From positions 1 through 64,000 of the IMG/VR virus record IMGVR_UViG_3300032294_002797: DNA of 64,000 bases; one strand, 5' to 3'. Every line of letters begins with the position of its first letter. Position 1 is the stretch's first letter. A model generated the notes under the pieces. It did no database searches, was not told the origin of the DNA, and saw nothing but the letters and a program-made list of their open reading frames with translations. Of this stretch, positions 650-53,900 are shown piece after piece. The position numbers were made by a program, and so were the translations under genes.

Positions 650-685
650 ATAATTTTATTCTAAAACTTAGTTTGAATATTTTTC

Positions 686-697
686 GGTGTAATACTA
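686..697 (+). promoter_or_regulatory. putative late promoter (GGTGTA motif)
   Basis: Same motif precedes all four antisense HNH genes and several structural genes. Confidence 0.5.
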
Positions 698-701
698 TAC
701 T

Positions 702-795
702 AGGGTGTGGGTAGACACTCTTATAACAGATCAATTTATGATACTGGACGCCCAAATGATTGTCAACTACCCTTGACTTTTGTTTGGGTTGTCTT
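702..795 (+). ncRNA. structured RNA leader, kissing-loop motif copy 1
   Basis: Hairpin 702-721 (loop GGGTAG) and hairpin 746-795 (loop CTACCC); loops are complementary; homologous covarying copy at 10603. Confidence 0.7.
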
Positions 796-810
796 GTTTA
801 TATAGATAAA

Positions 811-1536
811 ATGAAAACAAAAATTTGTGGATCATGTAAAGTTGAGAAATCTATTGAAAGATTTTGTAAAGATAGTAGAAAAAAATCTGGATTATGTAGT
901 CAGTGTAAAGATTGTCGAAAAAAATATAATGATAACAATAAAGAAAAAAGACAAAAATATTATGAAGAAAACAAAGAACTAATATCTTTAAAAAATAAAA
1001 TATATAGATGTTCTAATAAAGAAAAATTAGATAAATACTATCAAAAACATAAAAAAAGACACAATGAATATTCTAAACGATGGTATCATTCTCATAAAGA
1101 ATCACAATCAAAATACAATAAAGAATGGAGAGAAAAAAACAAAGATAGACATCATGCAAATTATATAAAATGGAAAAATAAAAACCAAAAATATTTAAAA
1201 AAATATAGAAGAAAAAGAAGAAAACAGCCAACAGTTAAATTGATAGATAATGTAAGAAGAAGAATCAATAGTATGATTAAAAATAAGAGTAAACATTCAA
1301 TAGATTATTTAGGTATAGATATAAAATCATATAAGAAATATTTAGAAAATTTATTCCAAAAAGGTATGACTTGGAAAAATTATGGAGTTAAAGGATGGCA
1401 TATCGACCACATTATCCCACTATCTTCTGCAAAAAATGAAAAAGAATTGATTAAATTATTCCACTATTCAAATACTAGGCCTTTGTGGGCTAAAGATAAT
1501 CTAATTAAATCAAATCGTCATCCTCATACTTTTTAA
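811..1536 (+). CDS. HNH/endonuclease VII-like homing endonuclease with N-terminal Zn finger
   Basis: CxxC...CxxC N-terminus, Lys/Arg-rich linker, WHIDHIIPL...FHYSNTRPLWAKDN His-Me motif; antisense to neighbours. Confidence 0.85.
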   Translation: MKTKICGSCKVEKSIERFCKDSRKKSGLCSQCKDCRKKYNDNNKEKRQKYYEENKELISLKNKIYRCSNKEKLDKYYQKHKKRHNEYSKRWYHSHKESQSKYNKEWREKNKDRHHANYIKWKNKNQKYLKKYRRKRRKQPTVKLIDNVRRRINSMIKNKSKHSIDYLGIDIKSYKKYLENLFQKGMTWKNYGVKGWHIDHIIPLSSAKNEKELIKLFHYSNTRPLWAKDNLIKSNRHPHTF

Positions 1537-6762: not shown

Positions 6763-6975
6763 TCAAATAGTAGTTGACTCATTCTCTCTTTTCCATTCAT
6801 TAAAACAAATCTCTGCTCTTTCTGGGGTTTGACATTGATATATTACTTCATAGATTGGTCTACGTACTCCAAAATCACCTAGAGTAAAATAATTGGTAAC
6901 TCTTACAATCTCACTATAAAAAACAGTCTCATTACCTTGATGAACCCCAAGTATTTCTGTCCAAGATTTACTCAT
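6763..6975 (-). CDS. hypothetical protein
   Basis: GGAGA RBS. Confidence 0.6.
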   Translation of the reverse strand: MSKSWTEILGVHQGNETVFYSEIVRVTNYFTLGDFGVRRPIYEVIYQCQTPERAEICFNEWKRENESTTI

Positions 6976-7401
6976 TTCTTTTCTCCGTTAGGATTATAAA
7001 GAGTGGTACTCATTAGAAAATATTCTTTACTATCAAAATGTTCTTCGCCCCAATCTAATGCTTTTTCGCCATCGTCAAATGGACCAAAGTATTTTGTTTT
7101 TTCTTTTTCATCGACAACTATTAGTATAAATTTCATTTGTTTTCACCATATTTTTTAAAGGTCGCATAAATAGTAACACAAATAGCAATAGATTGAATAG
7201 CGTACCAGAAGTATAGTTCGTTCATTATCTCATCAAGGCCCATACTTACCATCGCTAAATCCCTCCTTATACCCATCATCGTATGCTTTTTCTATAACTA
7301 TTCTGAGTAAAGCCAATAATTCTTTAGGAATAGTTAGATTCTTGTTTCCTACAACAATTTGATTTATATTATGCTTTTCTATCCAATCGTCAAATTCTTT
7401 A

Positions 7402-9852: not shown

Positions 9853-10332
9853 AATCCATATCCTTTAAGAATATTTGTAACATAATTTTGTGTTTTAATA
9901 ATATCTATGGCTCTGATAGCATCTTCTAAAGATATAAATTCATATGGCATATCGGGCAAAACTATAGGGACGCCATTTTGTAAGACAACAAATTTATTGT
10001 CTTGTTTAGTAATAGATAGATTCATTTCTTTTCCTCTATTTTAGATTTTACCCACTCAAACCATTGATCTGGAGTAAAATTATAGTATCCTTATAATCTT
10101 GAACACAAGAGATAGCATAAGCAATATCTTCAGCCAGTGTTGGTTTAGTCATTATTTTCTTGCAACACTCCATTCAAATATTTAGCCAAATTCTCCACAT
10201 CATCTTCAGTCCAAACATATTCATGACCATTAGCATTACCATGCTCAATATCAAGTTGGTAACTTTCCAGAGAGTCAAGAATTAGGCCAATTTCATGCTT
10301 ATCAAGATTAATGTTCATTACTTTTCTCCATA

Positions 10333-10512
10333 ATATTGACCATGATGTACCAACTGCACCCGTCCCTACAATTTATTCCACTAAAAGAGGGCCGCTTTAA
10401 TAATAGGATATTTGGAACTATTATTTCACGATTCGGTCTGGTTTAGTCTCCCGTAGGTAAGTATATGACTTATCATCATGGAAAGTCCCATGCGACTCAT
10501 CATAGTCAATAT
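10333..10512 (-). ncRNA. candidate structured RNA (~180 nt)
   Basis: 15-bp closing helix (one G-U on minus strand) with internal hairpins, just downstream of promoter 10532-10559; no ORF of 60 aa or more. Confidence 0.5.
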
Positions 10513-10531
10513 CTAGTTTTGGTCTGACGGC

Positions 10532-10559
10532 AGTTTACCATAACATCGGCACTTGTCAA
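10532..10559 (-). promoter_or_regulatory. sigma70-type early promoter
   Basis: TTGACA-agtgCCGATgttatgg-TAAACT. Confidence 0.7.
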
Positions 10560-10602
10560 CACCAACCTTTAGAAAATATGCCAATATGGTGTATTTATTA
10601 GA

Positions 10603-10699
10603 GTTGAGAGTGTGGTCAGACATTTTCAATACTACAATATAATATCTATCAAACGCCCAGATAATTGTCAACTGACCTTGACGTTATTTGGGCTGTTTG
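10603..10699 (+). ncRNA. structured RNA leader, kissing-loop motif copy 2
   Basis: Hairpin 10603-10630 (loop GGTCAG) and hairpin 10650-10699 (loop CTGACC); complementary loops with compensatory change versus copy 1. Confidence 0.7.
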
Positions 10700-10715
10700 T
10701 TTTAATGGGTCAATT

Positions 10716-11429
10716 ATGACAAATAAAACTTGTAGTAAATGTAACAAAGAGTTTCCAGCAACAAACAAATACTTTCATAAAAATAAAGACCATAAAGATG
10801 GATTAAGAACATGGTGTAAGATTTGTGTTAAAACTTACCAAAATGACCACAAAAAAATTCGTAAATGTTTAGTTTGTCAAGATGACCTAGAACTATATTC
10901 CAAAAAACGATGCAAAAAATGTCAACAAAATTATACTAAACAATGTAGTAAAGAAAGAGATAAATCGGTTAAACGAAAACAGCAAAGTAAATTAAGAACA
11001 AAGAAATTTCATGAAAATAATCCAAATAAATTAAGTGAATATAATAAAAAATATAGAGAAAGATATAATAAATGGAAAAATAGTAAATATAAAAATGATC
11101 TCAATTTTAAATTGCAAAAAGCATTAAGAGACAGACTTTATCATGCTCTGGCTTCTAATATCAAATCTCAACACACAATGGAACTATTAGGATGCTCTAC
11201 AGAACAATTAAAGGTTCATATAGAGTCACAATTTAAAGATGGTATGAGTTGGGATAATTGGTCTATTAAAGGGTGGCATATTGACCATATTCGCCCATGT
11301 TCTTCGTTCGATCTTTCTGATCCTGTTCAACAAAAACAGTGCTTTCATTACTCTAATCTTCAACCATTATGGGCTAGTGAAAACCTAAAAAAGAATAATA
11401 AATGGGTTTCAGACCCAATAGTATTTTGA
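10716..11429 (+). CDS. HNH/endonuclease VII-like homing endonuclease
   Basis: Zn-finger N-terminus; GWHIDHIRPC...FHYSNLQPLWASEN; paralog of 811..1536. Confidence 0.85.
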   Translation: MTNKTCSKCNKEFPATNKYFHKNKDHKDGLRTWCKICVKTYQNDHKKIRKCLVCQDDLELYSKKRCKKCQQNYTKQCSKERDKSVKRKQQSKLRTKKFHENNPNKLSEYNKKYRERYNKWKNSKYKNDLNFKLQKALRDRLYHALASNIKSQHTMELLGCSTEQLKVHIESQFKDGMSWDNWSIKGWHIDHIRPCSSFDLSDPVQQKQCFHYSNLQPLWASENLKKNNKWVSDPIVF

Positions 11430-11465
11430 TTCTTTGATTTTGATGGGATTTAATCCCGATTTCAT

Positions 11466-16353: not shown

Positions 16354-16502
16354 CCTCTTCCTTTCTGCACAATTAAGGTCCGTACAATAACAAAAACTGA
16401 ACCCATAGATATACTATCAGATAGTACAGAAAATTAGGAGGGGGTTCTAATATTTTCATAATACATGCTCCTTAGAACATATATTATAATATACCCCTAA
16501 AA

Positions 16503-16550
16503 CTCGCTGACTATCACTAAGACCGCCAAATCTGTAGGATTAGGTGAGAC
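16503..16550. repeat. dispersed repeat family B copy 2
   Basis: GCTGACTA-N14-AAATCTGTAGGATTA-N5-GAC. Confidence 0.8.
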
Positions 16551-16649
16551 TATAAAAATATCTTATATTGAGAACTAATCTCAACTAATTATTTACTATA
16601 TCTTTTACAACCTTGTTACTATTACAGTATACCACACTCTAAAGGTTGT

Positions 16650-16678
16650 CGCAAGTGGTTGACTCATAAGAACTTAGA
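16650..16678. repeat. family A single 29-bp site
   Basis: CGCAAGTGGTT-N7-AAGAACTTAGA. Confidence 0.6.
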
Positions 16679-16708
16679 ATCAGTAGTTCTTGTTACTATA
16701 TCAATATT

Positions 16709-16755
16709 CTCGCTGACTATCGCCAAGACCGCAAATCCGCTGGATTAGGCGAGAC
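16709..16755. repeat. dispersed repeat family B copy 3
   Basis: GCTGACTA-N13-AAATCCGCTGGATTA-N5-GAC. Confidence 0.8.
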
Positions 16756-16799
16756 AAATTAAAAGATTCTACTCTTTATATTTATAGTTAAGATTTTAA

Positions 16800-16828
16800 C
16801 CTAACCCTTTGTCCCATAAAGACTTACA
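16800..16828. repeat. family A single 29-bp site
   Basis: CCTAACCCTTT-N7-AAAGACTTACA. Confidence 0.65.
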
Positions 16829-16884
16829 TCCACACACCTATCCATTATATCGGCACTGTGGCGTTTTGTCTATAACTTTTTTGA

Positions 16885-16966
16885 CGTAACCCGTTGTGGC
16901 ACTTAAACTTACGACAAAATTTCGGGGCCCGATTTGCCCTAAGTCCTTTGATACCAAGCACTTACG
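16885..16966. repeat. 82-bp double-palindrome element (family A) copy 1
   Basis: 29+24+29 bp architecture. Confidence 0.9.
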
Positions 16967-16984
16967 TCAAATGATGTTGAATCA

Positions 16985-17031
16985 AAAGAGAAAGCCGCAG
17001 CCGGTTTCCCAGCCACGGCTCTCCCCCTTTT
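16985..17031 (-). terminator. intrinsic terminator
   Basis: Long GC-rich hairpin with GAAA-type loop and T-rich tail after the DUF932 gene. Confidence 0.7.
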
Positions 17032-17049
17032 CATCGTGACACGAAAAGA

Positions 17050-17997
17050 TCAGACGGCGTTCGCAAACTCCACTGCGGTATTGAGTGCCTTGAGATTATC
17101 AACTCCGTTCTGGCCGAACCAGAGAGAGTCAAGGCGATTGCTCACATTGCGACCCTTAGTATAATTCAGGTATTCATTGTAGCCGTTATAAGCAGCCCAC
17201 CATGTACCCCGAACCCCCGTTGCACTCTGCTTCGGGCCTTCAACAAGGGCGAGAATCTCGTCCATGATATTGCGGGTACGGGTTTTGATATCCTCGTCGG
17301 GAGTCTTATCAATACCCAGCACCACCTTCACATAACGCTTGATATCTGCTTGATTGAAGTCCTTACTGGCGAGGAACCGATACTGTTCCGCAGTAGCCTC
17401 AAACTGAGCATTGATATTGTCCATAATATCACGCACGTTTTCCAGATTGGTCTTGCTGGAACGAGTGTGACGAATACGAATCAACTGGCTATCCTTACTG
17501 GAGTGAGCAGCCGCAAGCGTATTCACGCACACGACGCGAATCGGAGTATATCCGACGCGAATCGACGTGGTGCCGTCATGGCTGTTCGACAGCAGAATGA
17601 ACTTGCTCACCTCGTCACCGGGAACAATCTCGCTGTTCGAGCGGTTGAGTTGAGCCAGAACCCAAACCTTTTCACCTTCGGAGAGAGAGCCAGCCGTATG
17701 CAACTGGCACTCACCAGCGTCGAGAAACGGCTGGAACCAATCGAAAGCGGCTTGATTCTGGAGCGGCGTATAACGCGGCCCCACAACACCCAGCACGCGA
17801 TTATCATCCTTACGATAGGTAGCCTTGGCATTGACCAATGTACCCTCTGCGGTAAACAAATCCTTTGTGCCAACTTCCCAATCCAGACCAGCAGCGGTAA
17901 TCGCTTCGCCGATAGAGGGATTTTCGTCCAACTGCGTACCCTCACCATGCCAAGGGGTAGCACCAACAAACATCATCTTTTCAACCATAGCAGGCAT
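17050..17997 (-). CDS. DUF932 family phage/plasmid-like protein
   Basis: PWHGEG, AGLDWEV, LGVVGPRYTPLQN, LLSNSHDGT, TPIRVVCVNT and GTWWAAYN motifs. Confidence 0.9.
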   Translation of the reverse strand: MPAMVEKMMFVGATPWHGEGTQLDENPSIGEAITAAGLDWEVGTKDLFTAEGTLVNAKATYRKDDNRVLGVVGPRYTPLQNQAAFDWFQPFLDAGECQLHTAGSLSEGEKVWVLAQLNRSNSEIVPGDEVSKFILLSNSHDGTTSIRVGYTPIRVVCVNTLAAAHSSKDSQLIRIRHTRSSKTNLENVRDIMDNINAQFEATAEQYRFLASKDFNQADIKRYVKVVLGIDKTPDEDIKTRTRNIMDEILALVEGPKQSATGVRGTWWAAYNGYNEYLNYTKGRNVSNRLDSLWFGQNGVDNLKALNTAVEFANAV

Positions 17998-18039
17998 AAT
18001 CAACCCTTTCGTGTTATCGTTCTTCGTTCAACTGTACTG

Positions 18040-18068
18040 ATTCTACACTATAGATATCGGCCTGTCAA
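18040..18068 (-). promoter_or_regulatory. sigma70-type early promoter with CCGATA box
   Basis: TTGACA-ggCCGATAtctatagtg-TAGAAT. Confidence 0.8.
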
Positions 18069-18096
18069 GCAGAAAACTTGCGAAAAAATTTCGTGA

Positions 18097-19798: not shown

Positions 19799-19799
19799 A

Positions 19800-19874
19800 T
19801 AGGGCGTGGAGGAGTCGAACCTTCCCTTTTTTTCACCTTATAAGAGTGACTGCCACTACCGGCGGCAACGCCCC
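19800..19874 (-). tRNA. trnI: atypical tRNA-Ile(TAT)
   Basis: Acceptor GGGGCGT/ACGCCCT, anticodon arm TCACT-CTTATAA-GGTGA, TTCGA; short D-loop and T-stem mismatch. Confidence 0.65.
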
Positions 19875-19924
19875 ATATGAGTATCATACACTATCTATCG
19901 TCAGTTGTCAACCCCAATCTTTAG

Positions 19925-20009
19925 CGGAATCTGAGGGATTCGAACCCCCGGAGGATTTCTCCTCGTCGGTTTAGTAAACCGGTGCATTAGACCACTCTGC
20001 CAAGATTCC
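19925..20009 (-). tRNA. trnS: tRNA-Ser(ACT)
   Basis: Type II cloverleaf with long variable arm, G73, loop TT-ACT-AA. Confidence 0.85.
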
Positions 20010-22364: not shown

Positions 22365-22393
22365 ATTCTACATTAGAGTATCGGCAGTGTCAA
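22365..22393 (-). promoter_or_regulatory. sigma70-type early promoter with CCGATA box
   Basis: TTGACA-ctgCCGATActctaatg-TAGAAT. Confidence 0.8.
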
Positions 22394-22421
22394 GAGAAAA
22401 ACTTTGGCAAAAATATTTTGA

Positions 22422-22503
22422 TGCAAGTCCTTGCTGCATCAGCAGTTACGTCAAAATCGGCCCCGCGAATTCGCCCTAAGTCTTTATGCTGCAACAACTT
22501 AGC
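22422..22503. repeat. 82-bp element copy 4
   Basis: 29+24+29; abuts the tRNA-Asp 3' end. Confidence 0.9.
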
Positions 22504-24333: not shown

Positions 24334-24415
24334 CCTAAGTGCTTGTCCCATAAGAAGTTACGACAAATTTTAGCCGCCGAATTTGCCCTAAGTCCTTATC
24401 CTACAATGAGTTACC
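24334..24415. repeat. 82-bp element copy 6
   Basis: 29+24+29. Confidence 0.9.
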
Positions 24416-24939: not shown

Positions 24940-25133
24940 TAAGATTTTACCTTATGATTAAAAGCCGTATCATATGCTTCCTCTGCCTCTTCGATTTTTT
25001 TCAACACGCTATTTTGCATCTTCTGAAACTGGGCTTTATTGCCCCAGTAATAACCTTCTTCAATATGGTCATGGACAAGGCTCAAGAGATAATCAAGTTC
25101 AGTCTTAGTAAATTCAATAGTTTCGGTTTTCAT
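24939..25133 (-). CDS. hypothetical protein
   Basis: TAATG coupling. Confidence 0.65.
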   Translation of the reverse strand: MKTETIEFTKTELDYLLSLVHDHIEEGYYWGNKAQFQKMQNSVLKKIEEAEEAYDTAFNHKVKS

Positions 25134-25366
25134 TACCAATTCTCCGGCATAGAAATCTCATCAAAACCAATATAGCATATCACTAACGAATTGTCAAACT
25201 GATCCCATTCCAAAGCACCATCATCATATTCTCCATGCCACCAATCACCCCAACCACCTTCTTCTTGATTCCAAGTAAGATCAATAGGAGACGAATATCC
25301 CTTCACGCAACAAAGATATTTCTGATTCACAATAGGATCACCATAATGCCAGTTCATTATTTCCAC
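25133..25366 (-). CDS. hypothetical protein
   Basis: Packed ORF. Confidence 0.65.
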   Translation of the reverse strand: MEIMNWHYGDPIVNQKYLCCVKGYSSPIDLTWNQEEGGWGDWWHGEYDDGALEWDQFDNSLVICYIGFDEISMPENW

Positions 25367-25518
25367 CTAAAACTAAAGTGAGTAGCCTCGTTATCACAAA
25401 TAAACGTAAAATATGCCAGAAAGAACATAGTCAAAGATGGGAAAAATAAAATGATTTTACGAAAGATTCTCATCATGTTTCCTTTTCCACCATTATACCA
25501 TTCTTTATCGTCAAGTCA

Positions 25519-26040
25519 AGTACCGACACACTGATAGTTTTACGAATAACACTCGGTACTATGTTAGTTCAACCTCAAGGTTTTACCTTATCTAAGGAAA
25601 CTATCAGCAGATTTATAACCAGCGAATCTTTTACGCCCCGATTCTATAATCCATATTAGCCTAAATACTCTAGTGCGAATATCTTCGGGAATATGGAAAC
25701 CGTCCACGGAACTCCTCCCTAGAATCGAGTTAAACTTCCGGAATGTTTTTCGATTCATCTGGCTCTTGGAAACGGTTACTGGTATATTTTATATGGCAGA
25801 GTTTTTAGCCTATCACAAAGGATGGGAAGGGCGAACTCTTTTAATCCTAACCTATTATCTAGGAACCATAATATTGTTTATGGGTGTCACCTATTTCTAC
25901 TCATGCTATCGCATTTTCGGAGGCCACATGGAAGGATCGTCACCGGTAACTCCTCTTCGCTCTGTTGTGCTTTGCCTCGTCATACGGAAAACCGTCACCC
26001 ATAAAGTATTGGTCGTGGTGAGGACGCTATCCCCCATAGA
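25519..26040 (-). ncRNA. candidate large structured ncRNA (~520 nt)
   Basis: Own promoter 26049-26076; no minus-strand ORF of 60 aa or more; several 7-10 bp perfect helices and a 3' pseudoknot. Confidence 0.6.
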
Positions 26041-26076
26041 TTGGTATTACTATACAGCATATAACCTTGCTGTCAA

Positions 26077-26260
26077 CCCCGGCGATGATTACGTCTTCGC
26101 TGAACGGGAGGTTTATCGTAATAGGTTATCCAATCTAGTCCCTGAGCATGGACCCACGAAAGTTTGTCATAGTACGCTAGGTTTAGTGCTGCTTCTCTAT
26201 CCTAGCACGGCTTAGTATGATGTTATCTCTGGCACTCAACCGCTATGATTTGTTTTGTCT
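26077..26260 (-). ncRNA. candidate structured RNA (~185 nt)
   Basis: Own promoter 26270-26297; multi-stem junction; no ORF of 60 aa or more. Confidence 0.45.
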
Positions 26261-26326
26261 TACTCAGTCATTCTACAATATATTATCGACTTGTCAAGAG
26301 GGTTTCTTGAAAAAATATTTTTTTGA

Positions 26327-26408
26327 TGTAAGGTGTTGGAGGATAAAGACTTACGACAAATCCGGCGGCGCAAATTCGCCCTAAGTCCCCTTGGGCAAAG
26401 AACTTAGA
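26327..26408. repeat. 82-bp element copy 7
   Basis: 29+24+29. Confidence 0.9.
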
Positions 26409-26419
26409 GCGAACCGCGT

Positions 26420-26902
26420 TTAGGTAGTTGCTTCTTCTGTATCGTCTTTGAAGAATTCTTCCATACCAAACTCATTCCACAATGCGACAGGAATCATATC
26501 CTTACTCGGATATTCCACATAGTTATCAGCACCATTATCCCAAATACCACAGAAAGCCATGCCCGGCTCCCAATAACTAGCCTTTACATCATATCCCAAC
26601 TCAACCAGTTTATCATACAAACCAATAGGAGGACTCCACGCACTATCAAACGAACAACTTACTTGGTTTCCTACCCTAGTAGCCTTCAAGCCGTGATATT
26701 CTTCCCTATCTGTACCCATATCGGCCCCAATATCCCATTTGGTTCCCCAATTATCTATTTGCCAGCCGTACCAATCTTCACCTTCTGGTAGAGGCAGAAA
26801 TTCTTCACAAGCCTTACCCAGATTATAGGCTTTCTCAAATCGGTCAACCATAGAAACATCAGTATGCTCAACCGTCAATTTATTCAAACACCAATTAGGC
26901 AT
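26420..26902 (-). CDS. DUF1281/YubB-like ferredoxin-fold protein
   Basis: MPNWCxNxL, WYGWQIDNWGTKWD, FDSAWSPP and EPGMAFCG motifs. Confidence 0.8.
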   Translation of the reverse strand: MPNWCLNKLTVEHTDVSMVDRFEKAYNLGKACEEFLPLPEGEDWYGWQIDNWGTKWDIGADMGTDREEYHGLKATRVGNQVSCSFDSAWSPPIGLYDKLVELGYDVKASYWEPGMAFCGIWDNGADNYVEYPSKDMIPVALWNEFGMEEFFKDDTEEATT

Positions 26903-27904: not shown

Positions 27905-28003
27905 ATGAACCCTTTTTGTTGTGAAAACTTTCCCTTATGTCTCACGATTCTACACTACTTATCGGCAAGAGTCAAGTGCTAAGTTTAGAAAAAATATTTT
28001 CGC

Positions 28004-28085
28004 CATAAGTCGTTGCAGCATAAGGAGTTGCGTCAAATTTTGCGGCACCCGCTCGTCCTAAGTGCTTACACACCAAGGGCTTACG
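28004..28085. repeat. 82-bp element copy 9
   Basis: 29+24+29; contains the stop at 28081. Confidence 0.9.
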
Positions 28086-28287: not shown

Positions 28288-28366
28288 CTAATCCTCTCTT
28301 TCGTATGCTAATCCTACACTATACTTATCGGCTTGTCAAGCGGGTCTCTTGAAAAATTTTATTTGA

Positions 28367-28448
28367 CGTAAAGCGTTGAGACATAAGGAGTTACGTTAAA
28401 TTTTGCGGCGCCCCCTCGCTCTAAGTTCTTTGGCGGTAAGGGTTTGCG
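28367..28448. repeat. 82-bp element copy 10
   Basis: 29+24+29; contains the stop at 28421. Confidence 0.9.
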
Positions 28449-31069: not shown

Positions 31070-31151
31070 CTTAAGTCGTTGGAATATAAGGAGTTACGTC
31101 GAATTTTGCGGCGCAAATTTTCCCTAAGTGCTTATGCAGTAAGGGTTTGCG
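31070..31151. repeat. 82-bp element copy 13
   Basis: 29+24+29; contains the stop of 31132..31293. Confidence 0.9.
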
Positions 31152-31940: not shown

Positions 31941-32013
31941 CTCTTTCTCTCTTTCTTATACGGGAATTATACCTTAGTTATCGGCAAAAGTCAAGCAGAA
32001 TATTTAGAGAATT

Positions 32014-32042
32014 TTTAAATCCTTATTTCTCAACACTTTACG
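32014..32042. repeat. family A single 29-bp site
   Basis: TTTAAATCCTT-N7-AACACTTTACG. Confidence 0.65.
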
Positions 32043-32086
32043 TCAAGACCGGCCTGAATGGACACTTAGAATCTTGAGAAACTGAT

Positions 32087-32168
32087 CGTAAACCCTTGGC
32101 AGATAAGGAGTTACGTCAAATTTTGCGGCGCCGCCTCGCCGTAAGTGCTTATACAGCAAGGCTTTGCG
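32087..32168. repeat. 82-bp element copy 14
   Basis: 29+24+29. Confidence 0.9.
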
Positions 32169-32543
32169 TCAACTATTTACAACCCAGGCCGCTATACATC
32201 CGATCACGAATGAACAAAACAGCATAATCTGATCATTCTTTATCATTTTTTCTATGATCCTTTGAAGGGTAAACCAAATCAGAAACAAGCCAACTGCACC
32301 CAATACCCACCACAAATCCCACAAACATCCAAATCCATTCTACATTTAGATCGGCCATCCCTAGCACCCCTCTTTAGTTTTTATTCTACAGGAATTTTAC
32401 TGATCATGTACCCTAAGAAAAACCCTAGAGTCACAATAAAATTTAGACCCATCAAATATACAAGAATATTCATAAACCTTCACCTCTCTTTTCCACATTC
32501 TATACTATTATCGGCCTGCGTCAAGCCCAAGGTACAGTCTTTT

Positions 32544-32590
32544 TGGCTGACTAAACCCACTCAGCCCAAATCCGCAGGATTACCTGGGAC
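32544..32590. repeat. dispersed repeat family B copy 6
   Basis: Consensus match; contains the stop of 32580..32750. Confidence 0.85.
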
Positions 32591-35357: not shown

Positions 35358-35487
35358 TTTTCTTTCTCTCTTTTTTCTCTTTTTCTTATATCGACATTAT
35401 ACCATGCTTTCTTGAAACTTCAAGAGAAAAATAGGAATTTTTATGTCAAGAGATTTTGACAAAACTTTTACGATTTATCGGCCCGAT

Positions 35488-35521
35488 TGGCACACCTTTT
35501 GCTATCGCAAGAGTCATGCCA
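35488..35521. promoter_or_regulatory. face-to-face pair of sigma54-type sites
   Basis: + TGGCACACCTTTTGCT (35488-35503) and - TGGCATGACTCTTGCG (35521-35506), both GG-N10-GC. Confidence 0.55.
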
Positions 35522-35532
35522 AAAAAAGTTGT

Positions 35533-35614
35533 TGTAAGTGCTTGTGGCATAAGGAGTTACATCAAATTTTTGGGGGCAAATATACCCTAAGTCCTTATAC
35601 CACAATAGGTTAGG
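35533..35614. repeat. 82-bp element copy 17
   Basis: 29+24+29; rightmost copy, no adjacent gene end. Confidence 0.9.
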
Positions 35615-35811
35615 GGGTTTTTTCGTTTATGTTACCCATTTCCCCCAAACTTCGAAAATCGCCCGGTGGTACAAACATAATAAGGACACAATAAAGTAAA
35701 TGTATCACCTAAACCACCCCTATAGACCCACTTTAATGATAAACTTAAATAATTTATGGGTTGTTGCTAGTAACCAGAGTAGCTTTTATTGTCTAAAAAT
35801 ACAGTTAATAT

Positions 35812-35842
35812 ACAACAAAAGGCGAGTTTCCCCGCCTTTGCT
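35812..35842 (-). terminator. intrinsic terminator
   Basis: AAAGGCGGGGAAACTCGCCTTTTGTT hairpin after the 35873 gene. Confidence 0.7.
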
Positions 35843-35872
35843 GCAACACACATTAGTATTTAAATTAAATTA

Positions 35873-47945: not shown

Positions 47946-50900
47946 ATGAGTATAGTATCCGTTCAAGAGCAATTTCAACCATCTAGATATCTTGTAATAT
48001 CTAATTTATCTAATTCACAAGAGATATCTACAACCAGAGTTCTAGTATCTGATTTAAGAACTAATACTATTAATTTGGTCACCATAGAAAAAGGTCCAGT
48101 CGGCGATACTGGACCACAAGGACCTAAAGGAGAACCCGGTAAAGATGGTTTAATTTTTAATGTATTGCCAATTACTAGTGGAGGTACCAATAATACTAAT
48201 TTTGATACCAATTATTTGATCTCATATGATGGAAATAAACTTGTTAGCTCTCCGTATACCGTTAATGATATAGTTAATCTGAGTAATGCTACTAATAATA
48301 GTATAACTGGTATAATAGCCGGTTCTGGAATACAACGCACAATCGGTCCCAATAATACTTCTATTTTAGATGTAAAAATCGGAGATGGTCTAAGAATTTC
48401 CAACTCTACTATTGTAGTAGATGATAGTGTCGTTAGAGCTACTGGCGTTAATATAAATCAATTGATCGGCACGCTCCCAATTTCTAAGGGAGGCACAAGT
48501 AATTCTTCGTATTCTGTTAATAGATTAATTTATTACAATGGTTCTAGTTTTAGTTCTTTTCCTTTGAATACTGGAAATATTGTAGTTAGCGGATCCACTA
48601 TAAATATTGTAGCTGGTTCTGGTCTTATTGGCGGAGGACTGACCACAGTACCAAACGGCACGGTGGTTTTGGAAATTGGTCCTTCTTCAGATATTTTAGT
48701 TGAAGAAAATTCTATATCTTTAACTCCTGTAGGATCTCCAGGAACATATACCAAAATTACGACAGATGATAAAGGAAGAGTCATATCTGGATCATCATTA
48801 ACTATTCAAGATATTATTGCATTGTTGGGATATACTCCTTGGCATGCCGGTAACGACGGAGAATCATCCGGACTGGATGCTGATTTATTAGATGGGAGGC
48901 ATGGATCTTTTTATCAAAATGCTAACAATTTATCTGGCACATTAAATTTAGATAGACTGCCCAATTTACACAGTCAATCCCAAGTAGGAACCAAATTTGT
49001 TATCAATACCAAAGGCCTGATAGAAGATGTATATCTCGCTGATTCTCAAGATATTATTTCTTCTCTTGGCTATAGGCCGCTAAATGCTGAATCAGATGAC
49101 ACAAAATTAGGATCATTAAATATTATTGGTAATTTAATTACTAGTGCTGGAGATGTTAGCCTATATGACAATCTTCCTCTGTTAGGTACAAACAGACCTA
49201 ATATATTACCCTCCGAGCCAAGAGGATTTACTTTTAATTATGGTGGATCTTTTACTAATAAAACAGGTATCTTAGCATATTATCCTACAGATAATCAACT
49301 TAGATTGATTACTAATATTTTTGGATCGGGTTCTAGTATAGATGCTAATGATATAAATCAGGACGATATTAATGGAGGAGATGCTCAATCTATTTATATA
49401 ATAGAGAATCTACAGGGAGATACTAGTACAGTTTTATTTAGAGAAATTGCAGATCAACTATATATTAGTACAAATACATCTCAAACTATATATGGCTTTA
49501 AAAGATTCTTAGCAGACTTAGAGGTTGCATCACAATTACGTATACTGGGAGACAATGCTACTCCTACTAGACCTCCGTTGTCTGTTGGTAATAATAATTT
49601 ATTAGTAACTAATTTAAATGCGGACTTATTAGATAATGCGCACGGATCATTTTATCGTAATGCAGCAAATATCACTGGGTCTTTTAGTTATAATAATGTT
49701 ACCTTTGATCACATTCAGGGCGAAAATAATTTTATACCTAAGTTTACAGATCCCAGAGAACCTTCTCGTCAAATCACAGCATCTAATATTTTACAAAGAT
49801 CTAATGGCGACATAGAAATTAGTAATGAAAGGAATCTGATTGTTGGACTAGATGATAATGTTACTGATAGTGCTTCTATTAATACGCTCACTGTTGGAGA
49901 AAACAATTTCACCAGTTCTGAAAATAGCATATCAATAGGTCAACATAATATATTAGCCGGCTTTAATTCTGCTACTATCGGCAGTCGCAATATGGCAAGT
50001 GGCGATAATTCTATTGCTACTAATTTAGGTTCTACTACCAGAAGTGATCAGTCAGTAGCTATGGGTTCTTATGGCATAACAGAGGTGCCTAACCAGTTTG
50101 CTTTTGGAGCTTTTAGAACAGTGGGTTCTGGTAATCAAATTTTGGAACACGGACAGTATTCAACTGTTGCAGCTTATTTAAGGGGCACAGAGACGGATGG
50201 TAATTGGCGCTCTATGACACCTATTATTAATTTACCTAAAGATAAAACTATAGCATTCAATATAGAACTATTAATTAATAAAGGTCTAAGTAGCGGTGTT
50301 GGACATTTTCTTTTTGAAAGTGGTATTATTAATAATGCAACCTATCGTAATCCTTTAAATATTACAGAAATACTAAATAGTACAACTGTTCCCAATAGCG
50401 GAACTAAAATACAAGTATTTAATAACTCTCAACTACGTAGACATTATCATTTTTGGAACTATACAAATCCAGTAAGACCAGAATCGCCAACCCGAGTCGG
50501 ACAATATATAAATTGTCTGGATGCTCCTAATAGAGAACTTGATATATCTATTCGACATTTACCTACTTATCATATGTATACTCCAACACAGGTACATATA
50601 AGTGGCATATTCGAAAAAACTTTTGATGGTAATCTCATTCTAGATGTATCTAAACCTAGATATAGCGGTATTTTTACCCAGTCGTTTACAAGTCCTCATA
50701 TCTCCATATACAGTAAAAATCATGGCGTGGTACAAGACTCAGAAGTAGATATAGAATTTGTAAGCAGCTCTAAATATTTTTTACCCAAAAAGAGATATAA
50801 AGCTCTGCTAAGTGGTCAAGACTCCTTTTTTGTATCATCACCAGAATGGAGAGGAGTCAAACAAACACTAAATAACGAAACTAAAATTTATATTCAAAAT

Positions 50901-53900
50901 ACTAGTGAATATAATAAATTATTTGCATTTGATTTTATTGCTTCTATTAGTAATAATATCATTACTTTACCCATCGGTACGGTAAATAATGCCGGCTATA
51001 GAATAGATCAAATTGCTAAAAATAATATGAATATTAAGCTTGTACAACCTTATTCTAATATAGCCTATAATCGAATTATACAATCTATTAGTGGCAATAA
51101 ATTATTTATTAACTATCCATTATACTCAGATAGTCCTAATCCACAACAATTTACTGGAGATATTCGTGTTATTCTAGATAATTACTCTTTTTTTGTATAT
51201 AAAGAATGCGATAGTCTTTATATTAATTCTGAGTTTCAAAATATCAAAGATGCAAAAGCCACAAATACTGCGCAGTTTTTCCCTGATGCGAGATTTTCAT
51301 TTGTAAATGACGGCGGATCAGGCACGGTGATCAATCCCCAAGATGCTCTTTTATACAGCAATCAAAATAATTCTATAGAGATAGCTGTTGATGATATTGA
51401 TCAAAATGGAATATTTGATTTAGATGATGTAACAAATGTGGCCACAAACAATAATCCTTTTATATTTTCTATATCTATACCATACAACATTACTAATATT
51501 TCAGATGGCTCCGTTGTTTCTGTAAGACCCGTTTTTAATAATAATACAGGAACATTAAATTTATATCATAGAAATACATATAATTGTAGTTATAGCTCTA
51601 CATACTCTGATCTCAATAAACATAGTGGCTGTTATATTAGATGGAAAGATGATAGTAATTATCACAGAATATCTATTTTTGATTCTGGAAATAAACCTGT
51701 CAATTTTATATCCAATCCTCCGTCATTTGAGTTATCTAACGGATATTTATCTGATAATAATAAATTTTTTAATATTCAACAAAGTGGTAATAGATATTAT
51801 TTATATACTAATACATCTTTTGATTATGAAACTAATAATATAATTCCCATTAGAGTTAAAGCATCATCACACAAAGATAATATTGCTCCTAATTTTGAAA
51901 AAATTCTTTATATCTATATACAGAATCAACAAGAAAATCCTTTAGTAGCTAAACCTATTGGTAATTTTAATATTTATGCTAATGATATTTTTGAATATAA
52001 TGTTCCTAGTGATACTTTTTCTGATTCAGATCATGGAGAACTAAAATATTCCGCAGAGATAAAAGGTGGACACTCCTTACCAAGATGGTTAGTATTTAAT
52101 AGCCAAACTATTAGTTTTAGCGGAACGCCGGATATATGCGATATAGGAGCTTATTCTATAGATTTAATAGCTACAGACGAAGATGGCTTGAGTATTACAG
52201 ATAATTTTATTATCGAGGTTGCCGATAATCCTGTATCAACCATGGAAGTCTTCGCTTATGACGTGAGCAATATTCTAAGAACAGAAAATATTTATCTTAC
52301 ACAAAATCATTTGGAGGAAAACGCACCTCCGGCTACACTTGTTGGAGAATTGCGTCATATCGGAGGATATAATCCATACATAACATTTTTGACTGCAGAA
52401 AATAATTTTTCCGGCATCTTGAATAAAAATAGCGATATCGTCACAAAATGTAAGCCCATTTTACAACATTATATCCCAGCATCTATATCAGGATCTCCAG
52501 AGTTTCTATCTATTTATTCTGATGTATCTCTTAAAGACAATCTTAACAATACTTTGGGATCTGGATATAAAGTAAAAAATGTATATAAGCCAACTATTTT
52601 TAGCGGAACACCTATTAATAATGGCAAAATTATTTTTGATAATACTAATTTTGATTATTCTGTATCTACATTATTTACAAATCAGTTATTACCCATGAGG
52701 AATGTTAATCCGTCTTTTGGTTCTAGGATGAGAATCGGCTCATTTAATGATTATAGCGCCACGTTGACGAATGGATTATTACAAGAAAAAAGAGGTTCAG
52801 ATATAGAGCTTATTTTGACCGAGAATAATGAAGTTATAAATCATAATATGAATGAACTTTTAATTTCTTATTATATTGAGGAAGAAGACCGATTTAATGA
52901 TATATGTTCAGAGAATGAAGTAGATAAATTAATATATACTAACTATCATGAATATAAAAATATTTCATGGTCCACCAAAAATATGTACTCTTGGTTATTC
53001 ACAGAGTCTGAAGATTCTAATTTGGTGCCAGAAAATAATGTTCTCCAGAACCTACAAAGCGAAAATATATCTAACCTAGAGAGTATTTCGTATCCACCCA
53101 CTTATACAAATATAGAATTATTAACAGAAAATTACGAGAATATAAATGATGAAGCTTATTTTTCATTAACGGATAATATTGTAGATTATGTGTGGTACTC
53201 TGATGATCCTATAAAAATTTATCGACAATTTCATAACAATATTGATAGATCTTTTATAGACAATAAGAGTCCTAATTATCCGCTAAATCCATTACAACAA
53301 TTATATTACAGTAATGATACTATAGGATTATTACAGTCAAATATAGATTATACTAGAGATAACAATCAATTAAATTATGCTCATGACTACTGGTATTTTG
53401 ATAAAGAACTTAATAATGCTGTCTTATATGTCGATAAATTAGGTTCTGATGATAATGCTCATTTTATTACAGAGCAACGCATTTATGCTGGAGCCTACAT
53501 TGATAGCGCCCCATATGAGTATGGTTTATTAATCACAGAGGATGGCCATGGAATTATTTCTAATACAAAAACTCATCATGGATCAAGAATAGAGTTATCT
53601 GATAGATATGAAATTTTGGAATCAATTAATATATTTAATGATAATGGCAAAATTTTTCTCGATTCTTCTATTGACTCTCTTCTTTGTGAAAATAACGATC
53701 TTGTAGTACACGACTATGCCATTAGCGCTAAGAGTGGTACGGCGTACATCCTATTTCCTGGTAAAAATAATCAGATTAAAATTAATTATCCTAATAGAGC
53801 ATCATTATCTGCTAATAGAATAGGTCATGGTCAACAGGGATATTATGAAGATCAACTGTCTCTATTACCCACAAGTCTAAAATTTACTGAACCAAACTTT

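What the first reader, a model, noticed from the sequence alone, without database searches (positions are those of the whole stretch)
25519..26040. Candidate large structured ncRNA of about 520 nt with a 3' pseudoknot
Seen: a gap in an otherwise dense gene run, bounded by its own promoter (26076-26049) and the next promoter (about 25519-25491). Perfect helices are 25996-26005 with 25877-25886 (10 bp), 25750-25756 with 25722-25728, and a terminal stem 25553-25560 with 25519-25526. The loop of that terminal stem (25531-25540) pairs over 10 bp with 25598-25607, forming a pseudoknot. GACGGTTT(T)CC occurs twice. Known: giant phage RNAs (GOLLD, ROOL) occur near tRNA clusters, but I cannot assign this one to either.
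Basis: partly seen in the sequence, partly recalled or inferred. Interest (0 to 1): 0.75.

Follow-up and report, generated by a model that had tools for sequence, protein, structure and literature searches.

The report
Phage operon of folded RNA modules
An uncultured freshwater jumbo phage carries a promoter-driven string of separately folded non-coding RNA modules. One module shows up in lake metatranscriptomes as a ~150-base, apparently circular RNA that matches no described family.

Summary
The region is not one 520-nt RNA that starts at 26040. It is part of a ~745-nt minus-strand unit (promoter 26297-26270, running to about 25519) that encodes six independently folding modules joined by A/C-rich linkers (CAAUACAA).

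- **Module A (26162-26009):** a four-way junction with a pseudoknot. Across 51 distinct homologues, 95.5% of cells pair and 28 of 42 pairs show compensatory changes.
this is a covarying hairpin inside module A.
- **Module BCD (25786-25616):** nearly invariant in 50 homologues.
it closes an optional module, M3.
these form a separate module, E.

Modules come and go between related phages. Freshwater metatranscriptome contigs cover module A specifically, end at 26012, and in two studies form a 149-151-nt head-to-tail cycle. No DNA locus shows that junction.

Rfam 15 (including GOLLD and ROOL) and ARAGORN give no match. The + ORF shows no sign of coding. Function is unknown. My best guess is a processed, stable, protein-binding RNA made early in infection.

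The parts
26270..26297 (-). Likely true promoter of the non-coding unit (TTGACA, 16-nt spacer, TAGAAT). It belongs to a ~115-nt promoter cassette repeated through the early region. The predicted start is near 26263.
   Evidence: 11 of 12 consensus match. The cassette is repeated at 28311-28426, 22365-22482 and elsewhere. The same promoter and leader sit directly before module A in many relatives.
26167..26248 (-). Module M0: an optional two-hairpin module between the leader and module A.
   Evidence: Present at 88-99% identity only in L013/L083 and L016/L017; absent in most relatives, where module A follows the leader directly. The hairpins appear in the minimum-free-energy fold.
26009..26162 (-). 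Module A: a ~150-nt four-way junction. Helices: P1 26159-26154 with 26018-26013; D-like hairpin 26153-26138; P3 26137-26130 with 26044-26037; P6 26123-26118 with 26050-26045; P5 hairpin 26073-26054; T-like hairpin 26035-26020. A pseudoknot (P4) pairs 26129-26124 with the P5 loop. The RNA species inferred from contigs runs from about 26162/26163 to 26012.
   Evidence: Alignments A1 and A5 and model R1. In 51 distinct sequences, 95.5% of cells pair, against 34-40% in slid controls, and 28 of 42 pairs show compensatory change. The pseudoknot was not in the model yet pairs in 100% of cells. G-U pairs outnumber A-C pairs 164 to 22, which fixes the folding strand as minus. RNA contigs.
26049..26076 (-). 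It matches the sigma-70 consensus but is hairpin P5 plus its flanks inside module A.
   Evidence: Consensus match. All six P5 stem pairs covary. The hexamers are lost in the TTGCCA/GATAGA and GGGGACG variants. Contigs span it.
25877..26005 (-).
   Evidence: Found only in L009/L068, L080/L085 and, elsewhere in its genome, L022. In L022 the closing helix is kept with different bases. Most relatives join module A directly to BCD.
25792..25870 (-). Module M4: an optional module closed by 25870-25865 with 25797-25792.
   Evidence: 95% identical in L080/L085 and partly present in L013/L095. Folds as a closed unit in the minimum-free-energy structure.
25616..25786 (-). Module BCD: the most conserved module. 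P1 pairs 25783-25778 with 25623-25618. P2 pairs 25777-25771 with 25704-25698. A second variable hairpin closes at 25696-25651. The terminal hairpin is 25644-25624, with an invariant 11-nt loop.
   Evidence: Alignments A2 and A6 and model R2. In 50 distinct sequences, 99.9% of cells pair and every change preserves pairing. It scores 123 bits even in lineages where module A scores 33 bits.
25519..25607 (-). S1 pairs 25607-25598 with 25540-25531. S2 pairs 25560-25553 with 25526-25519.
   Evidence: Conserved in 8 loci. It is absent from L009 and L011, and in L010 it stands alone after a promoter. Only G-U-compatible changes and one compensatory change were seen. An RNA fragment at 25519-25565 has depth 85 in run X18.
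25492..25519 (-). Next promoter (TTGACT, 16-nt spacer, TATAAT). It overlaps the last base of module E and drives the small ORF at 25475-25380 and the 77-aa gene.
   Evidence: 11 of 12 consensus match with a TG extension. 97-100% identical in L009, L011, L015 and L038.
25673..26215 (+). Antisense 180-aa ORF: not a gene.
   Evidence: No Pfam match. Substitution rates at codon positions 1, 2 and 3 are 0.220, 0.221 and 0.202. 63 of 75 indels are not multiples of three. The open frame is broken in most homologues.

Best explanation
The finding lies inside a ~745-nt non-coding transcription unit on the minus strand of a 223-kb freshwater jumbo phage. One of the phage's standard early sigma-70 promoters (26297-26270) drives a precursor that carries a chain of RNA modules: M0, A, M3, M4, BCD and E. 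Each module is closed by its own helix, and short A/C-rich linkers (ACAAA / CAAUACAA) separate them.

Shown here:
- Modules A and BCD are deeply conserved structured RNAs, and module A contains a pseudoknot.
- Modules are gained and lost as whole units between related phages.
- There is one such locus per genome.
- Module A sequences are present in RNA libraries from several freshwater studies. Its contigs repeatedly end one base after helix P1.

Inferred:
- The precursor is cut in the linkers, and module A accumulates as a discrete ~150-nt RNA.
- Its two ends meet at the base of P1 and are probably joined into a circle. The ligase could be the phage's own RNA ligase or a host ligase.
- The four-way-junction base acts as a compact scaffold that resists nucleases, and the pseudoknotted arm is the working part.
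- The most likely role is a trans-acting, protein-binding RNA (a decoy or scaffold) used early in infection, not a cis regulator.
For: Non-coding.

Homology in blocks, with modules independently present or absent, across about 80 IMG/VR contigs.

Covariation in module A, including the pseudoknot.

Near-invariance of BCD, with only pair-preserving changes.

Folding strand (G-U 164 against A-C 22).

Linker consensus.

One locus per genome, in the window's genome and in five complete relatives of 153-233 kb.

RNA evidence:
- Contigs from four metatranscriptome runs (three studies) map to 26011-26159.
- Contig ends fall at 26011-26015 in all four runs. An adapter follows directly at 26012 and 26145 in X16 and at 26015 in X18.
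- In X18, module A contigs reach depth 138-288, against 15-18 for the adjacent gene.
- X15 gives a 180-nt contig whose two ends overlap by 29 nt, which implies a 151-nt cycle.
- X18 gives two contigs that lead into each other, which implies a 149-nt cycle.

Module A words occur in 7 RNA runs.

No A-to-A junction with a short spacer occurs in any of about 40 distinct DNA contexts, nor among the 224 fetched hits to the junction pattern.

The phage encodes an RNA ligase domain (PF09414), and relatives that carry module A keep it.
Against: - Only assembled contigs could be laid, not reads, so there is no strand information and no read-level count of the junction.
- A cycle in an assembly graph can also come from tandem DNA copies in an unsampled strain, or from ligation during library preparation.
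- In X15 and X16, module A is no deeper than the neighbouring gene (2-3.5x).
- The very deep X17 contig (depth 12,554) shares only 26061-26134 with module A. Its 5' flank is found in no DNA locus.
- Nothing identifies a binding partner or a processing nuclease.
- The RNA ligase may serve tRNA repair instead.
- BCD is often followed by a U-run or by a gene's ribosome-binding site, which would also fit a cis role for that module.
Confidence: 0.6

Rival explanations
1. One reading: one ~520-nt structured RNA transcribed from the promoter at 26076-26049, ending in a stem and pseudoknot at 25519, comparable to GOLLD or ROOL.
For: The promoter-like site scores 11 of 12. All the listed helices exist. 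The minimum-free-energy fold of the region reproduces them.
Against: The promoter-like site sits in the middle of a module conserved from 26162 to 26009, and it is a covarying hairpin. The segments 26005-25792 and 25607-25519 are absent from most homologues, or occur alone. RNA contigs cover 26012-26159 and almost nothing between 26010 and 25611. Rfam finds no GOLLD or ROOL match at E <= 10.
Confidence: 0.05
2. The + strand ORF 25673-26215 (180 aa) is a real protein gene, and the conservation is protein-level.
For: It is the longest open frame in the gap, and a 180-codon frame is not very common by chance.
Against: No Pfam match. No third-position excess (0.220 / 0.221 / 0.202). 63 of 75 indels break the frame, and the frame is interrupted in most homologues. 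Conservation comes in blocks that match RNA helices, with compensatory changes. The + strand here is G-poor, which favours long antisense ORFs; several others occur in this region.
Confidence: 0.02
3. The modules, BCD especially, are cis-acting. They would act as a riboswitch-like or terminator/antiterminator leader, or as a 3'-end stabiliser, controlling read-through from the early promoter into downstream genes.
For: BCD is the last module in most loci. It is followed by a run of 5-7 U and the next promoter, or within about 20 nt by a gene's ribosome-binding site. BCD is conserved far more strongly than the neighbouring proteins, as ligand- or machinery-binding RNAs are. In the metatranscriptomes, BCD is rare compared with module A.
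Against: In the window, BCD is followed by module E and a fresh consensus promoter, so the downstream genes do not depend on read-through. No known riboswitch model matches. Module A survives in loci where BCD has been deleted (L004, L016). This rival does not explain module A's discrete ends or its junction.
Confidence: 0.2
4. The modules are decayed or highly derived tRNA genes (tRNA-like pseudogenes) left over from the adjacent tRNA cluster, without a function of their own.
For: The array is 3 kb from a nine-tRNA cluster on the same strand. Module A has a cloverleaf-like four-way junction. BCD stacks a 7-bp stem on a 5-bp hairpin, as the acceptor and T arms do. One variable module in L015/L087 ends in a T-arm-like hairpin, a 7-bp stem and CCA.
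Against: ARAGORN and the Rfam tRNA model detect none of them, even at E <= 10. The non-tRNA parts (pseudoknot, P5, P6) are the best-supported helices. BCD is nearly invariant over lineages whose proteins are only 50-60% identical, which is the opposite of decay. An encoded CCA is not conserved.
Confidence: 0.05
5. Module A, or the linker together with a module, is a new self-cleaving and self-ligating ribozyme. It would cut itself out of the precursor and leave ends that a host ligase such as RtcB circularises.
For: The ends are defined, and a head-to-tail junction is seen. Conservation is strong and the fold is pseudoknotted. Relatives of this phage use self-cleaving Pistol ribozymes a few kb away. 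Module A's 3' end is the same whichever module follows it.
Against: No known ribozyme family matches in the window. Two cuts would be needed. The phage has no RtcB. The conserved linker also precedes ordinary ribosome-binding sites, which suggests a general nuclease site or leader motif and not a ribozyme substrate.
Confidence: 0.1

Closest known systems
Stable RNAs of the phage T4 tRNA cluster (species 1 and 2, rnaC/rnaD). Recalled from my own knowledge, not tested here.
   Same: Small, stable, structured phage RNAs of unknown function, transcribed with or next to a tRNA cluster and trimmed from a longer precursor.
   Different: No sequence or model relationship was tested or is expected. Here there is a separate promoter, a chain of swappable modules with a conserved linker, a pseudoknotted four-way junction, and a head-to-tail junction.
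GOLLD (RF01998) and ROOL (RF03087), large phage-associated RNAs
   Same: Complex-folded, phage-borne non-coding RNAs found near tRNA genes, with unknown function.
   Different: No match to either covariance model at E <= 10. Those are single RNAs of roughly 600-800 nt. This locus is a chain of 80-170-nt units that vary in number between relatives.
Engineered tRNA scaffolds for recombinant RNA (PMC3753655), and circular-aptamer expression by flanking ribozymes plus RtcB (the 'Tornado' system; recalled from my own knowledge)
   Same: A functional RNA domain is placed on one arm of a tRNA-like junction, or the ends are closed into a circle. The RNA is then processed out of a precursor and accumulates to a high level.
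   Different: Those are man-made. Here the arrangement is natural, the junction is not a true tRNA, and both the processing enzymes and circularity remain unproven.
Bacterial Y RNAs with tRNA-like domains (YrlA). Recalled from my own knowledge.
   Same: Modular non-coding RNAs in which a tRNA-like module is fused to a protein-binding module. Some are phage-encoded.
   Different: No Rfam Y RNA match. The genome has no Ro/TROVE protein. In module A, the paired 5' and 3' ends form the junction's own stem, not a Ro-binding helix.
Ribozymes attached to phage tRNA genes (HDV-like theta ribozymes, PMC10879173; Pistol ribozymes in this phage's relatives)
   Same: Structured RNAs embedded in phage tRNA regions that shape RNA ends.
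   Different: Those are short, known self-cleaving motifs placed directly beside a tRNA. The modules here match no ribozyme family, and they stand under their own promoter.

Membership tests
GOLLD RNA (RF01998) | Match to the family covariance model | tested here: not met
   cmscan of the whole window at gathering score, and of 25000-26800 at E <= 10 with lax filters: no match.
ROOL RNA (RF03087) | Match to the family covariance model | tested here: not met
   Same searches: no match.
tRNA / tRNA-like structure | Detected as a cloverleaf with an anticodon arm by ARAGORN or Rfam RF00005 | tested here: not met
   ARAGORN finds 9 tRNAs elsewhere in the window and none in 25500-26300. It finds none in the homologous stretches of 12 loci. 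There is no RF00005 match at E <= 10.
tRNA / tRNA-like structure | Four-way junction with an end-closing stem, a D-like hairpin, a long arm and a T-like hairpin | tested here: met
   Module A helices P1, P2, P3 and the T-like hairpin are supported by covariation. The topology resembles a tRNA but the loops do not.
tRNA / tRNA-like structure | Encoded or conserved 3' CCA after a discriminator base | tested here: not met
   The bases after P1 read CCAA, GCAA, TCAA, TTCA or CTCTAA in different homologues.
tmRNA | tRNA-like domain plus a tag reading frame, detectable by ARAGORN or Rfam | tested here: not met
   none.
Group I intron | Match to RF00028, and interruption of a host gene whose exons flank the intron | tested here: not met
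   No Rfam match. The flanks are a promoter and leader upstream and a promoter or a U-run downstream, not exons. The 3' end inferred for the module A RNA is C, not G.
Known self-cleaving ribozymes (pistol, hatchet, twister, twister-sister, hammerhead, HDV-like, hairpin) | Match to a family model inside the array | tested here: not met
   No match in the window. Pistol ribozymes are found in relatives, but 1.4-3.4 kb away, just after a protein gene and upstream of tRNA-Arg.
Type III toxin-antitoxin RNA arrays (ToxI-like) | Tandem near-identical short repeats next to an endoribonuclease toxin gene | tested here: not met
   A self-comparison of the region finds no internal repeats. The modules are unrelated to each other in sequence.
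Circular RNA | Head-to-tail junction present in RNA and absent from DNA | tested here: inconclusive
   Cyclic contigs of 151 nt (X15) and 149 nt (X18) come from two studies. No such junction occurs in about 40 DNA contexts or in the fetched pattern hits.
Circular RNA | Resistance to RNase R, and a product from divergent-primer RT-PCR | not testable with these tools
   Bench experiment.
Retron msr-msd RNA | An adjacent reverse transcriptase | tested here: not met
   No RVT_1 match anywhere in the 223-kb genome.

The most novel reading that the evidence does not exclude
Module A is a genome-encoded circular RNA. It is cut out of a multi-module precursor at conserved linkers and ligated, possibly by the phage's own RNA ligase. 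This would be a natural counterpart of engineered tRNA-scaffold and circular aptamers. The array as a whole would be a swappable toolkit of protein-binding RNA modules, for example decoys for host RNA-processing or defence proteins, that jumbo phages exchange cassette by cassette.
Probability: 0.35. Interest if true: 0.9.

Novelty: categorically new. Interest (0 to 1): 0.8.

Why it matters
If this holds, it adds a new class of phage non-coding RNA with three unusual properties.

1. It has an operon-like chain of independently folded RNA modules that are exchanged as cassettes between related phages.
2. One core module (BCD) is conserved more strictly than the surrounding proteins. That implies contact with some invariant machinery.
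3. One product (module A) appears to be circular in nature. Apart from intron circles, I know of no phage-encoded circular RNA; this is from my own knowledge and was not searched exhaustively.

The family is single-copy in at least six complete 153-233-kb genomes. It is present in about 80 freshwater viral contigs and is expressed in several independent metatranscriptomes, so it is not a curiosity of one genome. It gives a concrete, testable entry point into what phages do with complex RNAs during host takeover, and a natural example of a design that synthetic biologists invented for stabilising RNA aptamers.

Tried and rejected
- **DNA search of 50,697 cultured-phage records** with the 1-kb region, and protein searches with the portal: no match. 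The terminase finds only ~26%-identical Bacillus and Microcystis phage hits, so host and taxonomy remain unknown.
- **Rfam** at gathering and at E <= 10: only chance snoRNA and Ocean-VII noise.
- **Thermodynamic stability** of the 745-nt unit: z = -1.4 on the minus strand and -0.8 on the plus strand. Not informative.
- **Pattern scan of 185,579 prokaryote genomes** for the BCD terminal hairpin: four hits. One is a chance match inside an ammonium-transporter gene. Three lie in short or phage-like contigs of metagenome-assembled genomes. So there is no evidence for a cellular homologue.
- **Junction-pattern scans** of viral and metagenome contigs: the pattern was too loose. All 224 fetched hits lacked the module A hallmark.
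- **Family searches of the genome** for RtcB, T4 Rnl1, a CCA-adding enzyme, reverse transcriptase and TROVE/Ro: all absent. The Rnl1 search had no working positive control.
- **Supplement of the 10,006-candidate viral RNA catalogue** (PMC10690425) is not held. I could not check whether these motifs are listed there without a name.
- **The GACGGTTT(T)CC repeat:** the two copies have different structural roles (a hairpin inside M3, and the 3' strand of BCD helix P2), so I treat the repeat as coincidental.
- **The linker as a tRNA-spacer motif:** rejected, because the window's tRNAs are not flanked by it.

Full report
**Context.** The window is the first 64 kb of a single-contig viral record of 223,302 bp, which CheckV rates as complete. 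It has a terminase, portal and head gene at 39-47 kb and a 4,690-aa ORF. From about 17 to 36 kb there is a minus-strand region packed with small genes, nine tRNAs and many near-consensus sigma-70 promoters: 44 are found where 21 are expected. No cultured phage is close. The runs that hold the sequence are freshwater, lake, drinking-water and wastewater samples.

**The observation.** Perfect inverted repeats are modestly enriched over dinucleotide shuffles: two 10-mers against 0.15 expected, and 2.9% of shuffles reach two. The folding energy of the unit is unremarkable, at z = -1.4. The minus-strand frames are full of stops. The only long frame is the antisense + ORF 25673-26215, which has no Pfam match.

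**Homologues change the picture.**
- The two flanking proteins retrieved 50 related IMG/VR loci.
- Comparing the gap with them showed conservation in discrete blocks, not a continuous stretch: 26167-26006, 25783-25758, 25720-25694 and 25653-25612.
- The stretch 26005-25784, which holds the 10-bp helix, is missing from most relatives.
- The stretch 25617-25520, which holds the terminal stem and pseudoknot, is missing from L009 and L011 and stands alone in L010.
- Reading the sequences side by side shows a chain of units, each closed by its own helix and separated by a short A/C-rich linker.
- At least ten unrelated units occupy the slot between the two constant modules in different phages. Each inserted unit brings its own copy of the linker.
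- The linker consensus is ACAAA before module A and CAAUACAA after it.

**Module A (26162-26009).**
- An alignment of 27 sequences folds into a four-way junction.
- I added hairpin P5, helix P6 and a pseudoknot between the P5 loop and the strand after P3. With these, 96.3% of cells pair, against about 36% when partners are slid, and 21 of 42 pairs show changes on both sides.
- A covariance model built without the pseudoknot found one copy in the phage genome and copies in nearly all loci that had been found independently through module BCD.
- On 51 distinct sequences, 95.5% of cells pair and 28 of 42 pairs are compensatory. The pseudoknot pairs in 100% of cells, and one of its pairs splits C-G 27 to G-C 23.
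- G-U pairs outnumber A-C pairs 164 to 22, so the minus strand is the one that folds.
Its six stem pairs all covary, and in about a third of homologues the hexamers are no longer promoter-like.

**Module BCD (25786-25616).** In 50 distinct sequences, the 18 core pairs are formed in 99.9% of cells. Every change preserves pairing, mostly C to U opposite G, and there are three compensatory pairs in the terminal hairpin. Two internal hairpins vary freely in sequence and length, or are absent. BCD stays at about 123 bits in lineages where module A drops to 33 bits, and its terminal hairpin is identical in phages whose neighbouring protein is only 52-57% identical.

**Modules M0, M3, M4 and E.** These have narrower distributions. 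The closing helix of M3 is kept with different bases in L022. Module E is almost invariant in eight loci.

**Coding test.** In the frame of the + ORF, substitution rates are 0.220, 0.221 and 0.202 at codon positions 1 to 3. 63 of 75 indels are not multiples of three, and the frame is broken in most homologues.

**Expression.** Only assembled contigs of public runs could be laid, and only once.
- In four freshwater metatranscriptomes from three studies, matches concentrate on 26011-26159.
- Contig ends fall at 26011-26015 in all four runs, one to two bases after helix P1. In X16, sequencing adapters directly flank 26012-26145.
- In X18, module A contigs have depths of 138-288, against 15-18 for the adjacent gene. 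In X15 and X16, depths are low and similar to the gene.
- Two data sets give a head-to-tail arrangement. In X15, a 180-nt contig has ends that overlap by 29 nt, so position 26011/12 is joined to 26161/62 in a 151-nt cycle. In X18, two contigs lead into each other, so 26012 is followed by the 5' start of a module A variant in a 149-nt cycle.
- In about 40 distinct DNA contexts, module A is always followed by the linker and another module, never by itself at short distance. None of 224 fetched hits to the junction pattern was a module A.
- This points to a circular RNA, or at least an RNA-level ligation. An unsampled tandem DNA copy or a library artefact cannot be excluded.
- One X17 contig of depth 12,554 shares 26061-26134 with module A but continues into a 5' flank absent from every DNA locus. 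I leave this unexplained.

**Enzymes.** The genome encodes an RNA ligase domain (PF09414, with a KxDG motif) at its end. It is conserved in relatives that carry module A. There is no RtcB, reverse transcriptase, CCA-adding enzyme or Ro protein.

**Comparison with known families.** Rfam 15 gives nothing and ARAGORN gives nothing. Module A has a tRNA-like topology but fails every tRNA detector and has no conserved CCA. There are no exons for an intron, no repeats for a ToxI-type array and no cellular homologue. Relatives carry Pistol ribozymes 1.4-3.4 kb away, in the leader of tRNA-Arg, which shows that this phage lineage makes heavy use of RNA devices. Full-text searches found no description of such an array. 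A catalogue of 10,006 unnamed viral RNA candidates (PMC10690425) may contain pieces of it, but its tables are not held.

**Verdict.** What is there is a single-copy, widely conserved, expressed non-coding operon of folded RNA modules. Its leading product is a ~150-nt pseudoknotted four-way junction that is probably circular. Its function is not shown. I rate a trans-acting, protein-binding role as the most likely and a cis role for BCD as the main rival.

Noticed in passing
window 26270-26387; copies at 28311-28426, 22365-22482, 24335-24406, 31072-31129, 16877-16946, 27988-28063 and others: A ~115-nt intergenic cassette is repeated at least a dozen times in the early region. It consists of a partly palindromic GC-rich element followed by a consensus sigma-70 promoter. 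It looks like a standard terminator-plus-promoter unit that punctuates the small early genes.
   Followed up: partly
L037 8421-8483, L018 10339-10401, L006 10613-10675, L052 1735-1797: Related phages carry Pistol self-cleaving ribozymes (54-57 bits, above the gathering score). Each starts within about 10 nt of the stop codon of a protein gene and lies about 150-200 nt upstream of tRNA-Arg(UCU). The window itself has no Pistol match upstream of its tRNA-Arg.
   Followed up: partly
genome 222594-223301 (outside the window), locus L106: An RNA ligase domain ORF (PF09414, KxDG motif) runs off the end of the record. In a 232,683-bp relative, the same gene is split across both contig ends. Both records therefore appear to be cut within this gene.
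   Followed up: partly
run X17, contig matching window 26061-26134: A 182-nt metatranscriptome contig at depth 12,554 matches the pseudoknot arm of module A with one mismatch. It continues upstream into 108 nt that occur in none of the fetched DNA loci or in the phage genome. It may be another RNA-level junction or an unsampled variant.
   Followed up: partly
L015 about 6846-7000; also L087, L066 and L020: One of the variable modules ends in a hairpin with a TTTGAAT loop, a 7-bp end-closing stem, one further base and CCA. That is a clear acceptor/T-arm mimic, and it carries an insert of about 125 nt. ARAGORN does not call it a tRNA or a tmRNA.
   Followed up: no
L026 7253-7328, L018 7151-7234, L006 7326-7398: Weakly scoring tRNA-like genes (38-46 bits; ARAGORN reads a 4-base anticodon in L006) sit under their own promoter directly downstream of module BCD in some relatives. 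In the window, module E occupies that position.
   Followed up: no
window 650-1504, 10319-11465, 16354-17049, 31941-32579, 35358-35872: These are further stretches of 500-1150 nt in the minus-strand region with no ATG-started minus-strand ORF of 45 aa or more. Some are covered only by long antisense + ORFs. They could hold other non-coding units.
   Followed up: no
window 25380-25475 (minus strand): A 31-codon hydrophobic ORF with a ribosome-binding site lies directly after the promoter at 25519-25492 and before the 77-aa gene. The DNA is 85-93% identical in several relatives.
   Followed up: no
window 47946-62018: A single 4,690-aa ORF follows the head genes on the + strand.
   Followed up: no
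window 17001-18000: G+C jumps to 0.52 in this 1 kb, against 0.35 just before it and 0.40 after. Overlapping long ORFs lie on both strands here (17050-18003 minus, 17350-18096 plus).
   Followed up: no
window 19924-20009 and 19799-19875: The tRNA set includes a Ser tRNA with anticodon ACU and an Ile tRNA with anticodon UAU. The phage tRNA genes carry no encoded CCA, and the genome has no CCA-adding enzyme.
   Followed up: no
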